IMG/VR virus record: IMGVR_UViG_3300044641_007115
Coordinates: 62,001 to 126,000 of that record
Direction: 5' to 3' (one strand)
Length of the DNA stretch: 64,000 nucleotides
Numbering within the stretch: position 1 is the first letter of the stretch; every line of letters begins with the position of its first letter. Of the stretch, positions 4,705 to 55,458 are shown in pieces. The notes beneath the pieces are model-generated. The model saw only the letters and a list, made by a program, of their open reading frames with translations, was not told the origin of the DNA and did no database searches. The position numbers were made by a program, and so were the translations under genes.

Positions 4705-5214
4705 ATGGCAAAGAAAACACAACTTTCCTTTTACAAGGTCAATCCCAACGCGGAAGCGCCCGCCTATGGAACCCAAGACTCTGCATGCTTCGATTTCAAA
4801 GCGTGTCTCATCGGTGAACGAGTAAGAGGGTTCGACCGCAACAACAAGGAATTCATCACACCGCTCAGCAACAAAATCGTCATCAATCCCGGCGAACGTG
4901 TTCTGGTCCCGACTGGTTTGATTCTTGACATCCCGGAAGGGTATTCTGTCCGTCTGCACGCCCGTTCCGGGTTGAGTCTCAAGCAAGGTCTGGTCTTAGC
5001 CAATGCGGAAGGCGTCATCGATAGTGACTATGTTGATCCCACGTTCATCATGATTACGAACATGTCCACGGTAATGGCTGACATCAAACACGGCGACCGT
5101 ATCGCACAAGGAGAATTGGTTCCCGTCTACCCGGCAGAGTTCAAGGAAATCAAAGAAGCACCCGGCAAGAAAACTGACCGACAAGGCGGTCTTGGGTCAA
5201 CCGGCGTCAAGTAG
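4705..5214 (+). CDS. dut: trimeric dUTPase
   Basis: motifs ACFD, RSGL, GVIDSDY, RIAQG, RQGGLGSTG. Confidence 0.95.
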   Translation: MAKKTQLSFYKVNPNAEAPAYGTQDSACFDFKACLIGERVRGFDRNNKEFITPLSNKIVINPGERVLVPTGLILDIPEGYSVRLHARSGLSLKQGLVLANAEGVIDSDYVDPTFIMITNMSTVMADIKHGDRIAQGELVPVYPAEFKEIKEAPGKKTDRQGGLGSTGVK

Positions 5215-7827: not shown

Positions 7828-9339
7828 CTAATCCTTCGGATCGTTGAATTTGTTCTTGAACTGGTTCATCGCCTTCAGAAGTTCTTCAGCGGTATGGCCG
7901 TCTTTCAACGTCAGCGTGCTGTTGCTACCCATACCCATATTCCAATGTTTCTGAAGTGACCAGCGGCCCGTTTTCGGATCAACCACGGCGAAATACTTGC
8001 CGCCTTTGCTGCTGAAATACTCTTTCGTCGGATCGGGCCGATCCAACACTTTGTCGTCCGGGCGGAATCCGAACTGGCCCAAGATGTTGACGATCTTGTC
8101 GAAACCCATTTCGGCTTTCTTCATCAATGCTGATAGCGACCGCTCTAAGGTGTCGGCATCCTTACCCTGTGCTTTGTCACCCAACAGAGATTTGATGTCG
8201 TGGGCGGGCCGCATACCGCCGCCGGGACCCTCTTTACGGACGAACTCAGCCGTAATCATCCACCAGACTTCATCGTCTTTCTTCATCGCGCCGCGCATCT
8301 TGTTCGGACCAAACATGACCCGAAGCATTTCCACGGTGTTTGTCCAGATGTGCTGATTGCCTTGTTTGTCGAAGGGACGGAATCCGAAACTGGTCAACAC
8401 CTTGACCATGTTGTTGATTTCGTTGTGAACCGAGAACGCGGCTTCTCCGCTCTTTCTCTTTGTTGTCACCCACTTCTCAAAAGATTGTGGTCCTTTGTTC
8501 TTCTGGTCGAAACGCTTTGTGTCCAGTTTCCACTTGTTCGAAGCGCTTCCACCCTGACGGGTTTCGTGCCACCAAGCACCATCCGGCCCGACAATCAGCC
8601 GGTATGGATCACTGACCATTTCGCGGTACGATTCTCCCGTGTTGGCGGGTTTCAAAACATATCCGTGCTTCTCTGCGACTCGAACAACAGCTTCAGCTTC
8701 AGCGGTCAGCTTTTGAGCGTTGTTGTATGCCTTCTGTTCCTTTTCCCGTTGTTCCGCTTCCCGTTTGACTCTCAACCCCTTCCAGTCCACGGAGCGAAGC
8801 GCACCGATCAAATCCTGTGCGTTTGTACTCTTGGCAAGCACGTCATCCTTCGAATAACCGCCCGGACGACCGGTCGGGTCGGCATGGACCAAATACCACA
8901 TGATCGGACGTTCTCTTTCATTCTGGATGGGGAGAACAACCAACACAAAGGTTCCCTCATGAGATACACCCCACACAACAACTTCGGAACCGAACTGAGC
9001 ATAGGTGGTCCCGGAACGCATCCGTTCCCCTTTCCCTTTATGGCGGGCACCGGGGACATGACTCATGATGGTGTTGATTTCGATGAACAGCCGGTCAGCC
9101 GGATGAGTAGACGCGGAATTCGACGGCGACCGGCGCACGCTCTGTTGCTTCATCATCGACCGGGCGACTTCCAGATCGATATTGTTCTTTTTCGCTAGTG
9201 CGGTGGCTTGCGCTAAAGCGACTTCGCCTTCGTGGGGAGATCCGGGACGATCAGCAAGCGCCAATAGCTTGATGATGGTGTCCATCGCGTCCCGTTCGCT
9301 CAGAAGTTGTTCACGAAGATAGGTCAGAAAGCCACTCAT
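7828..9339 (-). CDS. DUF2786-domain protein with repeated C-terminal modules, putative internal protein
   Basis: IIKLLALADRPGSPHEGEVALAQATALAKKNNI; late promoter GGTAAATA 6 nt upstream of ATG. Confidence 0.7.
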   Translation of the reverse strand: MSGFLTYLREQLLSERDAMDTIIKLLALADRPGSPHEGEVALAQATALAKKNNIDLEVARSMMKQQSVRRSPSNSASTHPADRLFIEINTIMSHVPGARHKGKGERMRSGTTYAQFGSEVVVWGVSHEGTFVLVVLPIQNERERPIMWYLVHADPTGRPGGYSKDDVLAKSTNAQDLIGALRSVDWKGLRVKREAEQREKEQKAYNNAQKLTAEAEAVVRVAEKHGYVLKPANTGESYREMVSDPYRLIVGPDGAWWHETRQGGSASNKWKLDTKRFDQKNKGPQSFEKWVTTKRKSGEAAFSVHNEINNMVKVLTSFGFRPFDKQGNQHIWTNTVEMLRVMFGPNKMRGAMKKDDEVWWMITAEFVRKEGPGGGMRPAHDIKSLLGDKAQGKDADTLERSLSALMKKAEMGFDKIVNILGQFGFRPDDKVLDRPDPTKEYFSSKGGKYFAVVDPKTGRWSLQKHWNMGMGSNSTLTLKDGHTAEELLKAMNQFKNKFNDPKD

Positions 9340-9368
9340 AGTAGCTATTTACCATTTCCGGGAACAGT

Positions 9369-9680
9369 TCAGGCTACGGTCCAGACATCCCGCTGATGGT
9401 AGTAATTGCCAATCGCGGACAGAACCGGAGTCAATTCCTTCCGAAGTGATGAAAGATTTACCGACTCCCGGACATCCAGTGTTACGTCCACGATAGCGAT
9501 CTGTGATGTCGTTGGACTCCGATCAATCCACGGGCCGGGCACACGGAACTTCCGTCGAACGAAATTTCCATACCCCCGGTCAAACTTTCCGATGTAGACA
9601 GTCGCATACGGATCAGTCGGTTTTGAAAGAACTGGAATCGCCGCGACGATTGGCAGAGCGAACAATTGCCGTCGTGTCAT
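9369..9680 (-). CDS. hypothetical protein with twin-arginine-like signal (MTRRQLFAL)
   Basis: true start likely 9680, 5 nt after TCTAAGTA. Confidence 0.55.
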   Translation of the reverse strand: MTRRQLFALPIVAAIPVLSKPTDPYATVYIGKFDRGYGNFVRRKFRVPGPWIDRSPTTSQIAIVDVTLDVRESVNLSSLRKELTPVLSAIGNYYHQRDVWTVA

Positions 9681-9699
9681 ATTGCTACTTAGATTAACG

Positions 9700-9825
9700 C
9701 AGGGGCGTGACATCCGGCTTAGCGTACCGGAAATGAAGACTGCCATCGCGCGTCAGGCAATCTAACGTCGGACTGTTGATGGAATGTCCGCGCACCGGTT
9801 GATCGATCACTCAATCAACCACCTG
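9700..9825 (-). ncRNA. candidate structured ncRNA downstream of Ro60 (possible non-canonical Y RNA)
   Basis: own late-like promoter GATAAACT (9838-9831); four hairpins with G-U pairs favouring the minus strand; CAGG/CCUG end pairing. Confidence 0.55.
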
Positions 9826-9855
9826 AGATCAGTTTATCATGATCCCGGTCGGCTG

Positions 9856-9888
9856 AAAAACAAAAAGGCCGGACCCGAAGGCCCGGCC
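9856..9888 (-). terminator. intrinsic terminator GGCCGGGCC-TTCG-GGTCCGGCC-TTTTT
   Basis: stem, UUCG loop and U-tract; identical copies at 50286 and 60557. Confidence 0.9.
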
Positions 9889-9907
9889 AGTTTTGTTCCC
9901 CGCCTGT

Positions 9908-11566
9908 TTAGGCGGTCGTGACTTCCGTTTCGTCTTCCGATCCCGAACGGCGGCTGGTGCCACCGCGCATGAAATCGGCCAACAGAACCGGCACGTTGGC
10001 GTCGAAACCAACGAAGTCCATCATACCCATATCCTTCGGATCGGCGATGGAGAACGGCGTCGCCGCCGTTGCGATGACGGCCAGCTTCGCGTTCGGCTTA
10101 TTCCGTTCCTTGCGGTACTTCACAAGCGCTTGCGACGGCTGGATGCTACCGGCCCAAGTTTCGTTGTCCGTGATTACCGTGAAGCAATCGACGTTCAAGT
10201 TGTTCTTGATGCCGTAGATCATCGGCAACGAACAATCCGTACCGCCGCCAAGACCGCGATTCGCCTTCTTCGTTGCCGATTCCAGCGTATCCTTGGCAGT
10301 GATCTTGAGATCGACGAACTGCGTGTCGAACCCACGGATGTCGTAGTTCTGTTCCGTGCGGATGAATACCATCGCTTGCGCGGCGGCAATCATCGCGTGG
10401 GTCAGAGCCGTACCATTCCAACTCATCGTCATCGAACCCGAAAGGTCGATGCCCACCAAAAGGTTCTGTCCGGTCGGCTCCACGTTGGCGAAGGTTCCGT
10501 AGAACGCATCCATCAACGCATCGACAACCGCCGGAACCACCGTCCACGAACCGTTACCACGCTGACCGTGACCGGCACCATAGGTACCGTAGGCCAGCAA
10601 CACCTGAAGCGGGTGGACCCGCGACCGGCGCAAGTATTCGGCATCGCGCAACCGGCTGGCGACCAGCTTGGAAGCATCAGACAGCGGGGCCAACAGGCCA
10701 GACTTCGACATGTTGCCCAAGTTGCGGATCATCGCAGTCAGCGGCATCTTTTGCAAGAGCGCTTCCTGAACCGTCGCGTCGTTGAGGAACTGAGTCGGAA
10801 TCATTTCGCGCGTCAAACCGTAGTCGGACACGATCTTGATGACTTCCTTGGCCGAAGTTGCCTTCTTTGCCAACTCAACGCCGTCGATCACGCGGGACAC
10901 GTCCGGCTTGTACTCACCCTTGGCCGCGTAACGGTAGATCGCGGAGCGAACTTCGTCTTCCGGCTTCGGGTGCGCCAAACGGAGAATGTCGCGCTGTGCC
11001 CATCCTTCACGCTGTTGGTACTTCGCCAACTGGTAGGCCAGATCGCGGGGCGACTTGGCAGAATACCAGTCCTTCACAGCACGGGCCAGAACAGCACCCC
11101 AACCGCGAAGCGAAGTTGCGTAGGAAATGAACGAAAACAGATGCGTGCCCGTGCGCGCGACCACCGGCAACTTGGACGCCGCGTACTGGCGCGTCTCAAT
11201 GACCGGGGAGTCGGTCGGGGACATGGCAAGTGCCAGCGCAAACAACGCCGGATCGTTCTTCGGTGCCCGGCCCGCGTCGCTGATGCCAGCGATCACATCG
11301 ACCGTGCGCTTACCGTCTTCCTTCAGACAGGCGATCACGTTCTTCGCGTGTTCGCGGGTCAGCTTTTCCGCCGAACCACCACTTGCGTAGTAGGCCGGGT
11401 TCTCAGACCCAAGGATCAGGAAGCGCTCCAAGAGCGTCCACTTATCGACGGTGAAAACGAATCCACCGTGGGCGTTCTGCGCCATTTCATTCTCACGTCC
11501 CGGAATCGGCTGATTCTGCGGGGTCGTCTTCCGGCTTGCGCCGTGCAAGCTATAGATGTTTGCCAT
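9908..11566 (-). CDS. rsr: Ro60 / TROVE-domain RNA-binding protein (Rsr orthologue)
   Basis: NAHGGFVF, LERFLILGSE, RTGTHLF, KYQQREGW, ALIRNLG-like AMIRNLG, RVHP, vWA DLSGSM, GGTDCSLPM, ITDNETW, DFVGFDA; start M8 after AAGAGG. Confidence 0.95.
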   Translation of the reverse strand: MANIYSLHGASRKTTPQNQPIPGRENEMAQNAHGGFVFTVDKWTLLERFLILGSENPAYYASGGSAEKLTREHAKNVIACLKEDGKRTVDVIAGISDAGRAPKNDPALFALALAMSPTDSPVIETRQYAASKLPVVARTGTHLFSFISYATSLRGWGAVLARAVKDWYSAKSPRDLAYQLAKYQQREGWAQRDILRLAHPKPEDEVRSAIYRYAAKGEYKPDVSRVIDGVELAKKATSAKEVIKIVSDYGLTREMIPTQFLNDATVQEALLQKMPLTAMIRNLGNMSKSGLLAPLSDASKLVASRLRDAEYLRRSRVHPLQVLLAYGTYGAGHGQRGNGSWTVVPAVVDALMDAFYGTFANVEPTGQNLLVGIDLSGSMTMSWNGTALTHAMIAAAQAMVFIRTEQNYDIRGFDTQFVDLKITAKDTLESATKKANRGLGGGTDCSLPMIYGIKNNLNVDCFTVITDNETWAGSIQPSQALVKYRKERNKPNAKLAVIATAATPFSIADPKDMGMMDFVGFDANVPVLLADFMRGGTSRRSGSEDETEVTTA

Positions 11567-11604
11567 GTTATTTTGACCTCTTTTCAAACACTACACCGTG
11601 TTAA

Positions 11605-12276
11605 CTACTCCTGTTCATCTTCCAAACTACGCATCACGTCTTCGAAAGGCACCAGTTCGGCCCGGCCTTCTTCCACTTCATTGATGCGTTCCTTCATCTC
11701 TGCCAGAAACTCTTCGTTCTCTTTAGGACCGCCGTGAAAGCTGATATCCCAATAGATTCCTTCCAGAAATTCCAACAGACTGAGAACTCTTTTGCCGCTG
11801 AGAATTGATTCCGTCCAGTTCCGGCGGATCGTAAACGTCTCATCGATCACAACCGGGATATGCGCCAACTGGTACATCGGTGAGTACGAAACCGACCAAC
11901 GTTCTCCTTGCGCATCCACTCCAATGAAGTCCGTCGAAATGTTGAAATCATTCGTGCCATCATGCTCGAAAACTTCACCGTAGGAACTGACAACCAATTT
12001 GACCAGCGATTCTTCCAGATCCTTACGTGGCTCACGGGCCTGTGCATGGAATTCATCGATTGCCCCACACCATGCATAATGTGCAACAACTTCCTTGAGA
12101 GTCGGATGTTGATCCACAATCGCAAAAATCTGACCCAAAGTCACGCCGTCGTCAACCTTAACCCGAACTCGAAGATCGGTCAGGCGAAACGGCTTTTCGA
12201 CGTAATCCTTCTTTTCCTTTCCATCCCACTCATACGCCGCTAGGCGGTCGCTGTGGAACACAACGTAATCACTCAT
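11605..12276 (-). CDS. hypothetical phage protein
   Basis: 223-aa ORF in operon with Ro60. Confidence 0.75.
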   Translation of the reverse strand: MSDYVVFHSDRLAAYEWDGKEKKDYVEKPFRLTDLRVRVKVDDGVTLGQIFAIVDQHPTLKEVVAHYAWCGAIDEFHAQAREPRKDLEESLVKLVVSSYGEVFEHDGTNDFNISTDFIGVDAQGERWSVSYSPMYQLAHIPVVIDETFTIRRNWTESILSGKRVLSLLEFLEGIYWDISFHGGPKENEEFLAEMKERINEVEEGRAELVPFEDVMRSLEDEQE

Positions 12277-12713
12277 GTTGGTTCGTATATCTCCAGCCCC
12301 GGTATGAAACCAAGGGAATCCACAATCATGGGTCTAACGACAGACCATTGAAGTCCGCCTAAGCCACAACCGATGGCCGGGATCGCAAGACTCGAAATCT
12401 CATGATCCTTGCACCAGTCAACAAGGACCACCAGACCAGCTTCAATCCACTCTATCTTCGAGGGGTTTCGCCAATGATCCTTGGTCGCAAAGCAGACGAC
12501 CCATTTTGGCGGTGGGGTGGTGTCATGCTGAGGCAACACGATGATGTTGCCCGGAAAAAGCGTTTTTGGTTCAGCACAAGCATGACGATATGAATTTAGC
12601 ACACCCGGAAACCGATTTGCAAACTTTTTTGCAAGACCGGCTCCCATCACTCCCACACAGTTCACCGGGTTGACCCAAACCTGTGCTTGGGACCGGAACA
12701 TATCGCCCGGCAC
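12273..12713 (-). CDS. macrodomain ADP-ribosylglycohydrolase (DarG/TARG1-like)
   Basis: GD.F, NPVNCVGVMGAGLA, FATKDHWR, IPAIGCGLGGL. Confidence 0.9.
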   Translation of the reverse strand: MPGDMFRSQAQVWVNPVNCVGVMGAGLAKKFANRFPGVLNSYRHACAEPKTLFPGNIIVLPQHDTTPPPKWVVCFATKDHWRNPSKIEWIEAGLVVLVDWCKDHEISSLAIPAIGCGLGGLQWSVVRPMIVDSLGFIPGLEIYEPT

Positions 12714-12717
12714 CGGA

Positions 12718-13137
12718 TCACTCCAATTCCTTCAACTGTTTCAACAACTCTTGCCGCTTCCGTTCCTTCTCAGATTCATCCGGGCGTGACGGCATCGACA
12801 GCACGCGGAAATCGGTTACCCAAACACCCGCGTCGCCGCTACATGGTCCGCTGAAATTCGACTTCGTGTAGGTGACTTCAATTTCCTGTTGATCTTCCAT
12901 CACCTTCAGCAACCGCTTGTAGAGAGCTTCGTCTTTGACGCTGAAATGAAACGCGGACCCATTTACTCCACTACCGCCATTGAATCCGCCCCGGACCAGT
13001 TCACCTTCATAGGTGTCACAGACCATTCCATACTGGCCCATCTTAACCACTTGGCCGATCTTCTTGCCGTCGCCGCTTTTGATGCCATAGCCACAACCGA
13101 CCAAGAACAATCCCATCAACACAAGAACGTATCGCAT
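12718..13137 (-). CDS. phage lipoprotein
   Basis: signal peptide with lipobox LVGC; G.VVK..TYEGEL..FHFSV. Confidence 0.75.
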   Translation of the reverse strand: MRYVLVLMGLFLVGCGYGIKSGDGKKIGQVVKMGQYGMVCDTYEGELVRGGFNGGSGVNGSAFHFSVKDEALYKRLLKVMEDQQEIEVTYTKSNFSGPCSGDAGVWVTDFRVLSMPSRPDESEKERKRQELLKQLKELE

Positions 13138-54366: not shown

Positions 54367-55458
54367 ATGAGCCTACTGACCGATATCCAATTCGCGGGCC
54401 GGGTGTCAGTCTACGTCCGTAACTTCAAGCAAAAAGGGGACTTCATTTGGAATTTCTCTTGTCCGATCTGTGGAGATTCCAAGAAGAAACGGGGCAAGGC
54501 GCGTGGCTATCTCTATCGGGTCGAAGATCGACTGTTATTCAAATGTCACAATTGTGAATTGCCGCCCATGTCATTGGGACGGTTCTTCCAACAGATCGAC
54601 GAAAGCCTCTACAAAGAATACATCGTCGCATCGGCCATAGAACGCAACAAAGGCCGCATAGGGCGACCGAAGAAGGATTGGAAGGAACAGATCCGGGACA
54701 TGGACTTCAGTCGTCCTGTGGTCGCTGTAGACCCATTTGCGGGCCTTCCTACGCTGGCATCACTCCCGGACGATCATCCCGCCAAGTCGTACATCGTCAA
54801 CCGTAAGATACCAAACTCGTTTCTCAACGTGCTGTTGTATGCGGAAGACTTTGCGGCGGTGGTGGACAAGTGGAAACCGAACGGCCCGGCGTTGGTCCAC
54901 GAACCTCGAATCATTATTCCATTCCGCAACCGAAAACGAATCTTGGCGATCCAAGGACGGAGTTTGGAGCCGGACGCCGCTCTACGGTATATCACGATCA
55001 AAGCGGATGATGACACCCCCAAGATTTTCGGGTTAGACAGGATCGATCTGACGGCGGATCGCATCTATGTGCTCGAAGGTCCCTTCGACAGCATGTTTTT
55101 GCCGAACGCGCTGGCAATGGCGGGCGCGGATTTGCCGAAGATTCTACCCAAACACAAGACGATTGTGGTGTATGACGACGAACCACACAATGCGGAGATC
55201 GTCGCCAAGATGGACGCGGCAATCCGGTATGGATACCGGGTATGCATCTGGCCGCGCCGCCAACAGAACACAGGACGAAAGGACATCAATCAGATGGTTT
55301 TGGACGGTCAAACGCCGGAAGAGATCCAGCAGATCATCGAAGAAAACAGCTATTCAGGGACGGCGGCTAAGATGTGGCTGACTAAATGGAGAAGAGACGA
55401 TTATGAACGACGAACTCAGCAAAATCGAAGCAACCGAAACGGAATTGCCGGGAACTGA
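54367..55458 (+). CDS. gp61: DNA primase gp61
   Basis: CPICGDS, KCHNC, QGR, EGPFDS.F, KDIN.M. Confidence 0.95.
   Translation: MSLLTDIQFAGRVSVYVRNFKQKGDFIWNFSCPICGDSKKKRGKARGYLYRVEDRLLFKCHNCELPPMSLGRFFQQIDESLYKEYIVASAIERNKGRIGRPKKDWKEQIRDMDFSRPVVAVDPFAGLPTLASLPDDHPAKSYIVNRKIPNSFLNVLLYAEDFAAVVDKWKPNGPALVHEPRIIIPFRNRKRILAIQGRSLEPDAALRYITIKADDDTPKIFGLDRIDLTADRIYVLEGPFDSMFLPNALAMAGADLPKILPKHKTIVVYDDEPHNAEIVAKMDAAIRYGYRVCIWPRRQQNTGRKDINQMVLDGQTPEEIQQIIEENSYSGTAAKMWLTKWRRDDYERRTQQNRSNRNGIAGN

What the first reader, a model, noticed from the sequence alone, without database searches (positions are those of the whole stretch)
9700..11566. Phage-encoded Ro60 followed by its own structured small RNA: candidate non-canonical Y RNA
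Seen: a full-length Ro60/TROVE gene, its terminator, a late-like promoter (GATAAACT), then ~125 non-coding nt. These fold into GGUUGAUUG/CGAUCAACC, GGAC/GUCC, AGAUUGCC/GGCAGUCU and UCCGG/CCGGA stems, with a GACGU/AUGUC junction helix and CAGG/CCUG ends. The next gene has a separate promoter. The RNA contains GUCCGA, which occurs in the Ro-binding 5' strand of Y RNAs, but I see no tRNA-like T-loop typical of YrlA. Established: bacterial Rsr genes usually have Y RNA genes next to them. Inference: a phage Ro60 ribonucleoprotein with a new type of partner RNA, perhaps used to scavenge or protect damaged RNA or to redirect PNPase.
Basis: partly seen in the sequence, partly recalled or inferred. Interest (0 to 1): 0.85.

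Follow-up and report, generated by a model that had tools for sequence, protein, structure and literature searches.

The report
Structured phage RNA, not Y RNA
A phage gene for the RNA-quality-control protein Ro60 is followed by a genuine, conserved structured RNA of about 110 bases, but this RNA lacks every hallmark of Ro60's usual Y RNA partners and belongs to an undescribed RNA family that in other phages sits just in front of a tRNA gene.

Summary
The sequence features are real: an intact Ro60/TROVE gene (9908-11566, minus strand), its terminator, a conserved extended -10 promoter, and a non-coding RNA of about 112 nt (about 9824-9713). The two closing helices (GACGU/AUGUC, CAGG/CCUG) and the GUCCGA 'Ro motif' are not conserved.

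The RNA is not a Y RNA. It has no terminal bulged stem, no GNCGAA motif and no tRNA-like domain. It matches neither Rfam nor a covariance model I built from canonical Y hairpins. Those hairpins do sit next to Ro60 in syntenic sister phages and in most of the other Ro60 loci fetched.

On the Ro60 tree this RNA replaced the Y hairpins once, at the base of the window's clade, and was later lost cleanly at least twice. Its core is CGUU, a hairpin with a GC-palindromic loop, UCA, and the hairpin CCGGUACGNNAAGCCGG. The same core recurs in about 45 unrelated phage contigs, 7-9 nt upstream of tRNA-Met, with no Ro60 or Y hairpin nearby.

Best reading: an independently transcribed RNA cassette of a new phage RNA family, possibly self-pairing through the palindromic loop. 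Its function is unknown. A role as a Ro60 partner is not excluded (about 15%).

The parts
9908..11566 (-). Ro60/TROVE gene, 552 aa, intact
   Evidence: Pfam TROVE and vWA_Ro60; PHROG 850 RNA-binding protein; PDB 2NVO and 1YVP at about 1e-101 to 1e-107. It keeps 120 of the 128 columns that are at least 90% conserved in 36 Ro60s with Y hairpins nearby.
9857..9888 (-). Intrinsic terminator of Ro60 (9-bp GC stem, UUCG loop, T-run)
   Evidence: conserved in L001-L008, L280 and L282.
9831..9839 (-). Extended -10-type promoter TGATAAACT (TG 9839-9838, hexamer 9836-9831); predicted start near A9824
   Evidence: Same position in relatives: TGATAGACT (L003, L282), TGAGAGAAT (L006), TGGTAGTCT (L280), TGATATGAT (L008), while the flanks diverge. 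The start site is inferred, not measured.
9713..9824 (-). Structured non-coding RNA, about 112 nt (5' end inferred, 3' end unknown)
   Evidence: Fold z = -2.0 on this strand only. Model R3 scores 100 bits here and finds a single copy in the window. Covariation.
9797..9820 (-). H1 hairpin, 9 bp; sequence free, structure kept
   Evidence: Stems are GGUUGAUUG/CGAUCAACC here, ACCGGC/GCCGGU in L006, GGCUGAC/GUCGGCC in L280 and AGAUCG/CGAUCU in L008.
9765..9796 (-). Invariant GGUG (9796-9793), then H2 hairpin with the conserved AUUCC...AACA loop
   Evidence: 4 of the 5 H2 pairs show changes on both sides.
9764..9767 (-). Conserved junction CGUU
   Evidence: Invariant in the W and T groups except CGUC in L280.
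9737..9763 (-). H3 hairpin, 8 bp, 11-nt loop carrying the palindrome CGCGCG (9752-9747)
   Evidence: Compensatory A-U to G-C change in L003. The outer H3 stem (the four outer pairs) is 99% paired. Loop palindromes are GCGCGC, GUGCAC or CGCGCG across the family.
9732..9736 (-). Conserved linker UCAUU (UCAYN in the family)
9713..9731 (-). H4 hairpin CCGGUACGNNAAGCCGG; the most conserved element
   Evidence: The 17-mer is identical in all six W lineages, which were found through Ro60 or the small ORF and not through this motif. The outer pair changes U-A to C-G in L003.
9681..9712 (-). Conserved block GUCACGC...CGUUAAUCUAAGUAG upstream of the small ORF. Not part of the RNA cassette; probably the ORF's own -10 region and a very short leader.
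   Evidence: Retained in L281, L011 and L015, which lack the RNA. The promoter function is inferred.
9369..9680 (-). Small ORF, 103 aa, N-terminus MTRRQLF (looks like a Tat-type signal peptide; not tested); true start ATG 9680
   Evidence: Homologues P0121-P0124. Indels and an in-frame stop upstream in relatives.

Best explanation
Downstream of an ordinary, intact phage Ro60 gene lies a self-contained non-coding RNA cassette: its own extended -10 promoter plus an RNA of about 112 nt with four hairpins.

The RNA is not a Y RNA. It is a member of an undescribed phage RNA family with this core: GGUG, H2, CGUU, H3 with a GC-rich palindromic apical loop, UCAYN, and H4 = CCGGUACGNNAAGCCGG. In unrelated phages the same core forms the 5' leader of a tRNA-Met gene, ending 7-9 nt before the tRNA.

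Most likely mechanism (inferred):
- The cassette makes a stable small RNA. In the window its 5' end is set by its own promoter. In the tRNA-linked versions its 3' end is set by RNase P cleavage of the tRNA.
- The RNA pairs with a second copy through the H3 palindromic loop (kissing dimer).
- It offers the invariant H4 loop to an unidentified protein or RNA partner.

In the window's lineage the cassette displaced the canonical Y-RNA hairpins that sister phages carry in the same slot. It was later lost again at least twice without loss of Ro60.

Shown: gene, terminator, conserved promoter motif, hairpins with covariation, family membership, distribution, absence of Y features.
Inferred: transcription start, discrete RNA product, dimerisation, action in trans.
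For: Structure:
- Two compensatory pairs and one G-C to G-U change appear already at 97% Ro60 identity.
- Six W lineages keep H1-H4 with different stem sequences.
- On the 31-sequence structural alignment 93.8% of cells pair versus 79.8% in shuffles; 12 of 19 pairs change on both sides; slid controls give 25-54%.
- G-U pairs fit only this strand.

Not Y:
- No Rfam match at gathering score in the window, and nothing relevant at E<=10. No tRNA.
- Models R1 and R2, built from Ro60-adjacent Y hairpins, gave 84 hits in 91 Ro60 loci, all on the Ro60 strand, with 96.9% pairing.
- The same models give nothing above noise in the 64-kb window or in any locus of the clade with at least 80% Ro60 identity.

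Distribution:
- On the Ro60 tree the W clade (100/99 support) is nested inside Y-bearing relatives. L011, which has no RNA, is nested among RNA-bearing lineages.
- L281 and L011 show clean absence of promoter plus RNA, with the flanks intact.

Wider family:
- R3 scores 26-45 bits on about 45 IMG/VR loci, versus 23.7 bits or less (mostly 14-21) for chance carriers of the H4 17-mer.
- 41 of these sites have a tRNA starting 6-9 nt downstream: 40 tRNA-Met and 1 tRNA-Lys.
- Those loci share no proteins with the window and hold no Ro60 and no Y hairpin.
- R3 finds nothing next to Ro60 in 123 + 75 other Ro60 loci.

Palindrome:
- The H3 loop is GCGCGC, GUGCAC or CGCGCG. The GCGCGC to GUGCAC change is a double substitution that keeps self-complementarity.
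- The predicted dimer is about 14 kcal/mol more stable than two monomers.
Against: - There are no expression data. The 3' end is undefined, and no terminator lies between the RNA and the small ORF, so the RNA could simply be the 5' part of a longer transcript.
- Dimerisation rests on loop palindromes and one double substitution. L006 and L280 keep only 4-nt palindromes, and L008 has replaced the H3 tip.
- The tRNA-linked members were fetched by the exact H4 motif and come from few independent lineages, many from one metagenome. Family breadth and H4 invariance outside the W group are therefore biased.
- The RNA took over exactly the slot, orientation and promoter position of the Y hairpins of sister phages. 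This is what a functional replacement would look like.
- Only 64 kb of a 184-224 kb genome could be searched for a canonical Y RNA.
Confidence: 0.55

Rival explanations
1. The RNA is a non-canonical Y RNA: Ro60 binds it in a new way, and it replaced the canonical Y hairpins as the tether or gate of the phage Ro60 particle.
For: - It lies directly downstream of Ro60 on the same strand in six lineages.
- On the Ro60 tree the switch from Y hairpins to this RNA coincides with a single node.
- The arrangement Ro60, terminator, extended -10 promoter, RNA is the same as in L010, where the RNA is a canonical Y hairpin.
- No canonical Y hairpin was found in the window or in clade loci, so Ro60 has no other visible phage-encoded partner.
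- Ro60 is known to bind non-Y RNAs such as misfolded RNAs with 3' tails (PMC12135203 introduction).
Against: - No terminal stem, no GNCGAA/CGAA motif and no tRNA-like domain. GUCCGA is not conserved and sits on the wrong strand.
- Each CGAA nucleotide matters for phage Ro60 binding in the one system tested (PMC12135203).
- Ro60 persists without the RNA in L011, L281 and L126.
- The family occurs at tRNA-Met loci without Ro60, and none of about 200 other Ro60 loci has it.
- Ro60 of this clade keeps 120 of 128 columns conserved among Y-associated Ro60s, so there is no sign of a changed RNA surface.
Confidence: 0.15
2. The RNA is a cis-acting 5' leader. It is made at the start of a transcription unit and acts on its own transcript, for example as a stabiliser, a processing platform or a put-like antiterminator, for whatever lies downstream (small ORF and DUF2786 gene here, tRNA-Met and HU gene elsewhere).
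For: - In both contexts there is no terminator between the element and the downstream gene.
- In the W group and in L040 it follows a promoter-like motif directly.
- The spacing to the tRNA is fixed at 6-9 nt.
- The cassette brings a promoter with it (L006 versus L281).
Against: - Downstream genes keep their own conserved upstream block and exist without the element (L281, L011, L015), so it is dispensable for their expression.
- The two kinds of downstream gene have nothing in common.
- A conserved palindromic loop and an invariant 17-nt hairpin are more than a stabiliser needs.
- No downstream terminator to be overridden was identified.
Confidence: 0.2
3. The RNA is a small catalytic or ligand-binding RNA (a new self-cleaving ribozyme or riboswitch-like aptamer) whose conserved junctions GGUG, CGUU and UCA form the active core.
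For: - It has three to four helices joined by short invariant single-stranded junctions.
- It occurs as a cassette in unrelated gene contexts in phages, as known small ribozymes do (my own knowledge).
Against: - No match to any Rfam ribozyme or riboswitch even at E<=10.
- No expression platform.
- The GGUG pseudoknot with the H2 loop is not supported in the W group.
- Nothing points to a cleavage site.
Confidence: 0.05
4. The element is not a functional RNA of its own. It is either a decayed tRNA gene in an array, or a DNA-level element such as a palindromic protein-binding site.
For: - In the 67-nt tRNA-linked form the arm sizes (4 bp with 9-nt loop, 5 bp with 7-nt loop, 5-nt linker, 5 bp with 7-nt loop) and the 7-9 nt spacing to tRNA-Met resemble a tRNA in an array.
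- The loop hexamers are DNA palindromes.
Against: - ARAGORN and the Rfam tRNA model do not see it even at E<=10.
- There is no acceptor stem.
- Stems covary with G-U pairs that work on one strand only.
- The core is conserved across unrelated phages and has its own promoter in the W group.
Confidence: 0.05

Closest known systems
Bacterial and phage Y RNAs (YrlA, YrlB; Thermus phage phiLo Yrl1/Yrl2)
   Same: Small non-coding RNA encoded within a few hundred nt of Ro60 on the same strand, here with its own promoter. It occupies the slot where syntenic sister phages carry canonical Y hairpins. Known Y RNAs lie within 4 kb of Ro60 on the same strand (PMC4201824).
   Different: No 5'/3' terminal stem with a bulge, no GNCGAAN0-1G or CGAA motif, and no tRNA-like module. 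No score with Y models R1 and R2 or with Rfam. Not co-distributed with Ro60.
HIV-1 dimerisation initiation site (DIS) kissing-loop hairpin
   Same: A hairpin that exposes a 6-nt GC-rich palindrome in its apical loop. The same two hexamers, GCGCGC and GUGCAC, are the natural DIS variants (my own knowledge). Here too the two forms differ by a double change that keeps self-complementarity.
   Different: This is an analogy of mechanism only. There is no homology and a different biological setting, and dimerisation is untested here.
tRNA-linked small RNAs released by tRNA processing (leader- or spacer-derived sRNAs); tRNA-adjacent phage RNAs such as GOLLD and ROOL
   Same: The family members outside the window end 7-9 nt before a tRNA, so RNase P would release them. 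GOLLD and ROOL are also phage RNAs that sit near tRNA genes and self-assemble through intermolecular contacts (my own knowledge).
   Different: The window copy has no tRNA next to it and has its own promoter. Its size is about 70-115 nt against 500-800 nt. No Rfam match to GOLLD or ROOL.
HK022 put RNA and other promoter-proximal antiterminator RNAs
   Same: Structured hairpins directly downstream of a promoter, with no terminator before the genes that follow.
   Different: No sequence or structural similarity was tested or seen. The element is dispensable for the downstream genes in close relatives. No target terminator was identified.

Membership tests
Y RNA (metazoan Y, YrlA, YrlB, phage Yrl) | Encoded close to Ro60 on the same strand | tested here: met
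   The RNA starts 84 nt after the Ro60 stop codon, on the same strand, in six lineages.
Y RNA (metazoan Y, YrlA, YrlB, phage Yrl) | 5' and 3' ends pair into a stem interrupted by a bulge or internal loop (stem-bulge-stem) | tested here: not met
   The proposed CAGG/CCUG and GACGU/AUGUC helices are lost in L003-L005 and absent in L006, L008 and L280. The consensus fold has only local hairpins.
Y RNA (metazoan Y, YrlA, YrlB, phage Yrl) | Conserved Ro-binding motif GNCGAAN0-1G / GGUCCGA on the 5' strand of that stem (PMC4201824; CGAA in PMC12135203) | tested here: not met
   There is no CGAA in the RNA. GUCCGA is present in 3 of 6 lineages only, on the 3' strand of H2.
Y RNA (metazoan Y, YrlA, YrlB, phage Yrl) | Scores with covariance models of Y RNAs | tested here: not met
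   Rfam 15 gives nothing at gathering score, and no Y family at E<=10 in 9300-10000. R1 and R2 find 84 hairpins in 91 Ro60 loci but score at most 13.8 bits in the window, and that hit is antisense inside an ORF.
Y RNA (metazoan Y, YrlA, YrlB, phage Yrl) | tRNA-like module with T-arm (YrlA subclass) | tested here: not met
   ARAGORN finds nothing in the window, and there is no tRNA or tRNA-like Rfam hit.
Y RNA (metazoan Y, YrlA, YrlB, phage Yrl) | Co-occurs with Ro60 across lineages | tested here: not met
   Absent in L011, L281 and L126 although Ro60 is intact. Absent from 198 other Ro60 loci. Present at about 45 tRNA-Met loci that have no Ro60 within the DNA held.
Y RNA (metazoan Y, YrlA, YrlB, phage Yrl) | Bound and stabilised by Ro60 | not testable with these tools
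   Needs EMSA or RIP.
New family defined here (W group beside Ro60; T groups in front of tRNA-Met) | Order GGUG, H2, CGUU, H3 with GC-palindromic loop, UCAYN, H4 CCGGUACGNNAAGCCGG | tested here: met
   Window scores 100 bits with R3. The W lineages score 63-98 bits and the T groups 27-45 bits, against at most 23.7 bits for chance H4 carriers.
Known ribozymes, riboswitches and phage RNAs in Rfam 15 | Match to a curated covariance model | tested here: not met
tRNA or tRNA-derived gene | Cloverleaf with acceptor stem, recognisable by ARAGORN or the Rfam tRNA model | tested here: not met
   Only the arm sizes of the 67-nt form are reminiscent of a tRNA.

The most novel reading that the evidence does not exclude
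The RNA is a true functional replacement of Y RNA. That would make a Ro60 particle built on an RNA with none of the canonical Ro-binding features, taken from a modular phage RNA family that elsewhere is made as a tRNA-Met leader. Ro60 could then be loaded by structurally unrelated RNAs, which would link Ro60 to a tRNA-associated RNA module.
Probability: 0.15. Interest if true: 0.85.

Novelty: categorically new. Interest (0 to 1): 0.6.

Why it matters
Three points matter.

1. It corrects an attractive but unsupported reading. Being next to Ro60 does not make an RNA a Y RNA. The sister phages show what the real Y hairpins of this lineage look like.

2. It brings out an RNA family that is in no curated library. 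The family has an invariant 17-nt hairpin shared by unrelated phages and a loop palindrome that evolves like a kissing-dimer site. It occurs in two settings: as a stand-alone cassette beside Ro60, and as a tRNA-Met leader. That gives clear bench tests.

3. The one-time swap from Y hairpins to this RNA, followed by repeated clean losses while Ro60 stays intact, is a natural experiment on whether phage Ro60 needs a phage-encoded RNA partner at all.

The label 'categorically new' refers to the RNA family, which has no detectable relative. Whether its mechanism is new is unknown.

Tried and rejected
- **Rfam:** run on the whole window, and at E<=10 on 9300-10000. Only terminator look-alikes came up. 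Also run on the relatives and on a tRNA-Met locus; only true tRNAs were found.
- **ARAGORN:** no tRNA in the window.
- **GGUG pseudoknot:** a pseudoknot between the invariant GGUG and the H2 loop is perfect (GGUG/CACC) in the 67-nt form. It is no better than shuffled loops in the W group, so it is not claimed.
- **Larger RNA upstream in the tRNA-Met phages:** the upstream sequence differs between loci, so the element plus tRNA is the conserved unit.
- **Relaxed DNA pattern in IMG/VR:** gave almost only chance hits in coding DNA.
- **Strict pattern in 185,579 species genomes:** 15 hits, all chance matches in GC-rich genes.
- **blastn of the RNA against 50,697 annotated phage genomes:** no match.
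- **Shared neighbours between the two contexts:** none. The tRNA-Met locus L037 carries an endolysin, an HTH protein, an aminotransferase, a MazF-like protein, HU and TnpB.
- **Ro60 in the tRNA-Met phages:** not in the DNA held and not among the 80 best of 186 Ro60-bearing IMG/VR contigs. This search was not exhaustive.
- **Recurring phage promoter:** TCATGATAAACT with up to 2 mismatches occurs 12 times against 4.5 expected. This is suggestive only.
- **Weak Y-model hit at 54860-54902 (-):** it lies antisense inside a 363-aa ORF and was treated as chance.
Full report
**What is in the window**

On the minus strand, 9908-11566 encodes an intact 552-aa Ro60 protein. It matches Pfam TROVE and vWA_Ro60 and PHROG 850. 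Its closest solved structures are D. radiodurans Rsr (6e-107) and X. laevis Ro60 (7e-101). The window is part of two IMG/VR phage contigs of 184 and 224 kb.

The elements that follow Ro60, in order, are:
- a textbook intrinsic terminator: stem 9888-9867 with a T-run to 9857;
- the motif TGATAAACT at 9839-9831;
- about 112 non-coding nt, roughly 9824-9713;
- a conserved block at 9712-9681;
- a 103-aa ORF that starts at ATG 9680.

The non-coding stretch folds better than shuffled sequence on the minus strand (z = -2.0) but not on the plus strand (z = -0.4).

**The RNA structure is real**

I collected relatives in three ways: through the Ro60 protein, through the small ORF, and by alignment.

Six lineages carry the RNA:
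- window, L001 and L002;
- L003-L005 (97% Ro60 identity);
- L282;
- L006 and L007 (87%);
- L280;
- L008 and L009 (84%).

Already at 97% identity there are two compensatory changes and one G-C to G-U change:
- AGAUUGCC/GGCAGUCU becomes GGAUUGCC/GGCAGUCC;
- UCCGG/CCGGA becomes CCCGG/CCGGG.

H1 has a different sequence in each deeper lineage but always forms a hairpin at the same place: GGUUGAUUG/CGAUCAACC, ACCGGC/GCCGGU, GGCUGAC/GUCGGCC, AGAUCG/CGAUCU.

On the structural alignment of 31 family members:
- 93.8% of cells pair, against 79.8% in shuffles;
- 12 of 19 pairs change on both sides;
- sliding the partner by 1-3 columns drops pairing to 25-54%.

Several pairs are G-U, so the structure works only on this strand. 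The TGnTAnnnT motif (extended -10 type) is kept at the same distance upstream in all six lineages while its flanks diverge. A transcription start near A9824 is inferred, not measured.

- The closing helices GACGU/AUGUC and CAGG/CCUG do not survive even in the 97% relatives, which have a 7-nt deletion and CAGG changed to CAGA. They are absent in the deeper lineages.
- GUCCGA is present in only three lineages. It lies on the 3' strand of H2, with the second C paired and the A bulged.
- The ORF 9369..9746 begins inside H3. Its 22 extra codons contain an in-frame TAA in L006, L008, L280 and L281 (GTAACGC instead of GTCACGC) and frame-breaking indels in L003. The region is therefore not translated as an N-terminal extension.

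**What sister phages carry in this slot**

More distant relatives keep the same gene order: Macro-domain protein, a protein of about 222 aa, Ro60, and, in most of them, the small ORF, a protein of about 500 aa (weak DUF2786 match in the closest relatives) and HSP20. The relatives L010 and L015 (73%), L017 (66%) and L018 (55%) have no such RNA.

Next to the Ro60 gene they carry short hairpins with every canonical Y feature (L010, L017, L018; the L015/L016 copy is degenerate, see 'Seen in passing'):
- a 6-7 bp terminal stem;
- a bulged C;
- a G-U and an A-U pair (GA/UU);
- an internal loop, then an upper stem;
- the motif GCCGAAG.

This motif fits GNCGAAN0-1G of Chen et al. 2014 (PMC4201824) and the CGAA motif shown to matter for Thermus phage phiLo Ro60 (PMC12135203).

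A covariance model built from two of these hairpins found 84 matches in 91 Ro60 loci. All are on the Ro60 strand, usually within a few hundred nt of the gene and often in tandem. The resulting alignment pairs at 96.9%, with 14 of 16 pairs changing on both sides.

Neither this model nor its refined version finds anything credible in the 64-kb window. The best hit is 13.8 bits, antisense inside an ORF. Nothing is found in any locus of the clade with at least 80% Ro60 identity either. Rfam itself recognises none of these hairpins.

**Gain and loss on the Ro60 tree**

In a maximum-likelihood tree, the eight Ro60s with at least 80% identity form a clade with 100/99 support. This clade is nested inside the Y-bearing relatives L010/L015, L017 and L018. 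The deep branching inside the clade is unresolved, and one of the unresolved branches, L008, carries the new RNA. The swap from Y hairpins to this RNA therefore maps to the base of the clade.

L011 lacks the RNA and is nested as sister to window + L003 (97/95 support). Its Ro60 stop codon is followed within about 50 nt by the small ORF.

L281 has the same small-ORF upstream sequence as L006. The roughly 135 nt holding the promoter plus RNA are cleanly missing between the terminator and TGTAACGC.

L126 has a different gene after the terminator.

So promoter and RNA behave as a discrete cassette that was lost at least twice while Ro60 stayed intact. The block at 9712-9681 belongs to the small ORF, not to the cassette.

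**The family outside Ro60 loci**

A scan of IMG/VR for the H4 17-mer gave 107 sites. A model of the window RNA from GGUG to H4 (R3) scored as follows:
- 26-45 bits over its full length on about 45 of these sites;
- at most 23.7 bits (mostly 14-21) on the remaining, chance carriers.

These hits form two types, of 75 nt and 67 nt. They share with the window RNA, in the same order and spacing:
- CGUU;
- a hairpin whose loop holds GCGCGC;
- UCAYG;
- H4.

The 67-nt type also shares the GGUG at the start.

Context of these sites:
- 41 sites have a tRNA starting 6-9 nt downstream: 40 tRNA-Met (CAT) and one tRNA-Lys.
- The sequence upstream varies between loci.
- The loci share no proteins with the window and hold no Ro60 in the DNA held and no Y hairpin.

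Conversely, R3 finds nothing next to Ro60 in 123 + 75 further Ro60 loci.

The family is also absent from:
- Rfam;
- 50,697 annotated phage genomes at blastn level;
- 185,579 species-representative genomes, using a strict pattern.

One caveat: the tRNA-linked members were found through the exact H4 motif, and many come from a single metagenome. Breadth and H4 invariance outside the W group are therefore biased. Within the W group, which was found through proteins, H4 is nevertheless invariant.

**Clues to mechanism**

The H3 apical loop always exposes a GC-rich palindrome:
- GCGCGC in both tRNA-linked types;
- GUGCAC in five loci of the 67-nt type, a double substitution that preserves self-complementarity;
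- CGCGCG in window (9752-9747), L003 and L282;
- CGCG/GCGC in L006 and L280.

Such a hexamer cannot pair within its own 7-11 nt loop. The simplest reading is loop-loop pairing between two copies. From my own knowledge, GCGCGC and GUGCAC are also the two natural variants of the HIV-1 dimerisation loop. The predicted dimer of the window RNA is about 14 kcal/mol more stable than two monomers.

H4 is identical between unrelated phages, which points to a specific, conserved partner. In L008 the tip of H3 is replaced by a second H4-like hairpin.

In the tRNA-linked form, RNase P would release the element with a short 3' tail. In the window nothing defines the 3' end, and no terminator separates the RNA from the small ORF. 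A cis-acting leader role therefore remains a serious rival.

**The protein gives no hint of a new RNA specificity**

Of the 128 alignment columns that are at least 90% conserved in 36 Ro60s with canonical Y hairpins nearby, 120 are identical in all eight proteins of the window's clade. Only A33H and K367Q are clade-wide changes.

**Verdict**

Calling it a Y RNA, or Ro60's own RNA, is not supported. Every testable defining feature fails, and the RNA's distribution follows its own family, not Ro60.

The positional replacement of the Y hairpins keeps a Ro60 link possible; I put it at about 15%.

The best-supported description is a promoter-driven RNA cassette of an undescribed phage RNA family. 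It is probably a stable small RNA that self-pairs through H3 and presents H4 to an unknown partner. This last part is inference and needs the bench tests listed under next steps.

Noticed in passing
L010:4709-4768; L017:4329-4396; L018:4672-4748 and 4761-4829; 84 sites in L127-L205: Short canonical Y-type hairpins (terminal stem, bulged C, GA/UU, GCCGAAG) sit next to Ro60 in most metagenomic and viral Ro60 loci. They are often in tandem and always on the Ro60 strand. Rfam 15 detects none of them.
   Followed up: yes
L037:9055-9121 (-) and about 45 other IMG/VR loci (e.g. L075:7882-7956, L046:4357-4423): Elements of 67 or 75 nt with the same core as the window RNA lie 7-9 nt upstream of a phage tRNA-Met (CAT) gene. 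In L092 an H4-type hairpin precedes tRNA-Lys.
   Followed up: partly
L281:410-495 versus L006:4668-4900; L011:3149-3205: Clean absence of the promoter plus RNA cassette (about 135 nt) between the Ro60 terminator and the small-ORF upstream block in close relatives. The cassette behaves like a moron-type indel.
   Followed up: partly
L008:4710-4765: The tip of H3 is replaced by an insertion that forms a second H4-like hairpin (CGGUACGUUAAAAUGCCG), next to an 8-nt palindrome AUCAUGAU.
   Followed up: no
window 9681-9699 and 9369-9680: The small ORF (N-terminus MTRRQLF; looks like a Tat-type signal peptide, not tested) has no Shine-Dalgarno sequence in this clade. An invariant CTAAGTAG lies 5-6 nt before the ATG, after a -10-like TAATCT, which suggests a nearly leaderless mRNA. 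L011 and L015 have longer leaders with a Shine-Dalgarno sequence.
   Followed up: no
window 11605-13137 and relatives L006, L008, L010, L013, L015, L018: The gene order Macro-domain protein (12273-12713), protein of about 223 aa with no family (11605-12276), then Ro60 is conserved. HSP20 lies a few genes downstream in L006, L015/L016, L018 and L281; whether the window has it was not checked.
   Followed up: no
window 9908-11566 (residues 33 and 367): There are only two clade-wide departures from residues conserved in Y-associated Ro60s: A33H and K367Q.
   Followed up: no
L037:8066-8946 and 11116-12219: In a tRNA-Met-type phage the element and the tRNA are followed by an HU-like gene and a MazF/PemK-like gene. 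A TnpB (OrfB_IS605) gene lies near tRNA-Pro.
   Followed up: no
L015:4669-4720 versus L016:4669-4729: The Y-like hairpin here is degenerate (GCAGAAG instead of GCCGAAG) and is missed by model R2. L016 differs from L015 by a 9-nt tandem duplication just downstream.
   Followed up: no
window 54860-54902 (-): Best window hit of the Y-hairpin model (13.8 bits, E = 0.36). It lies antisense inside a 363-aa ORF and was judged a chance match.
   Followed up: yes
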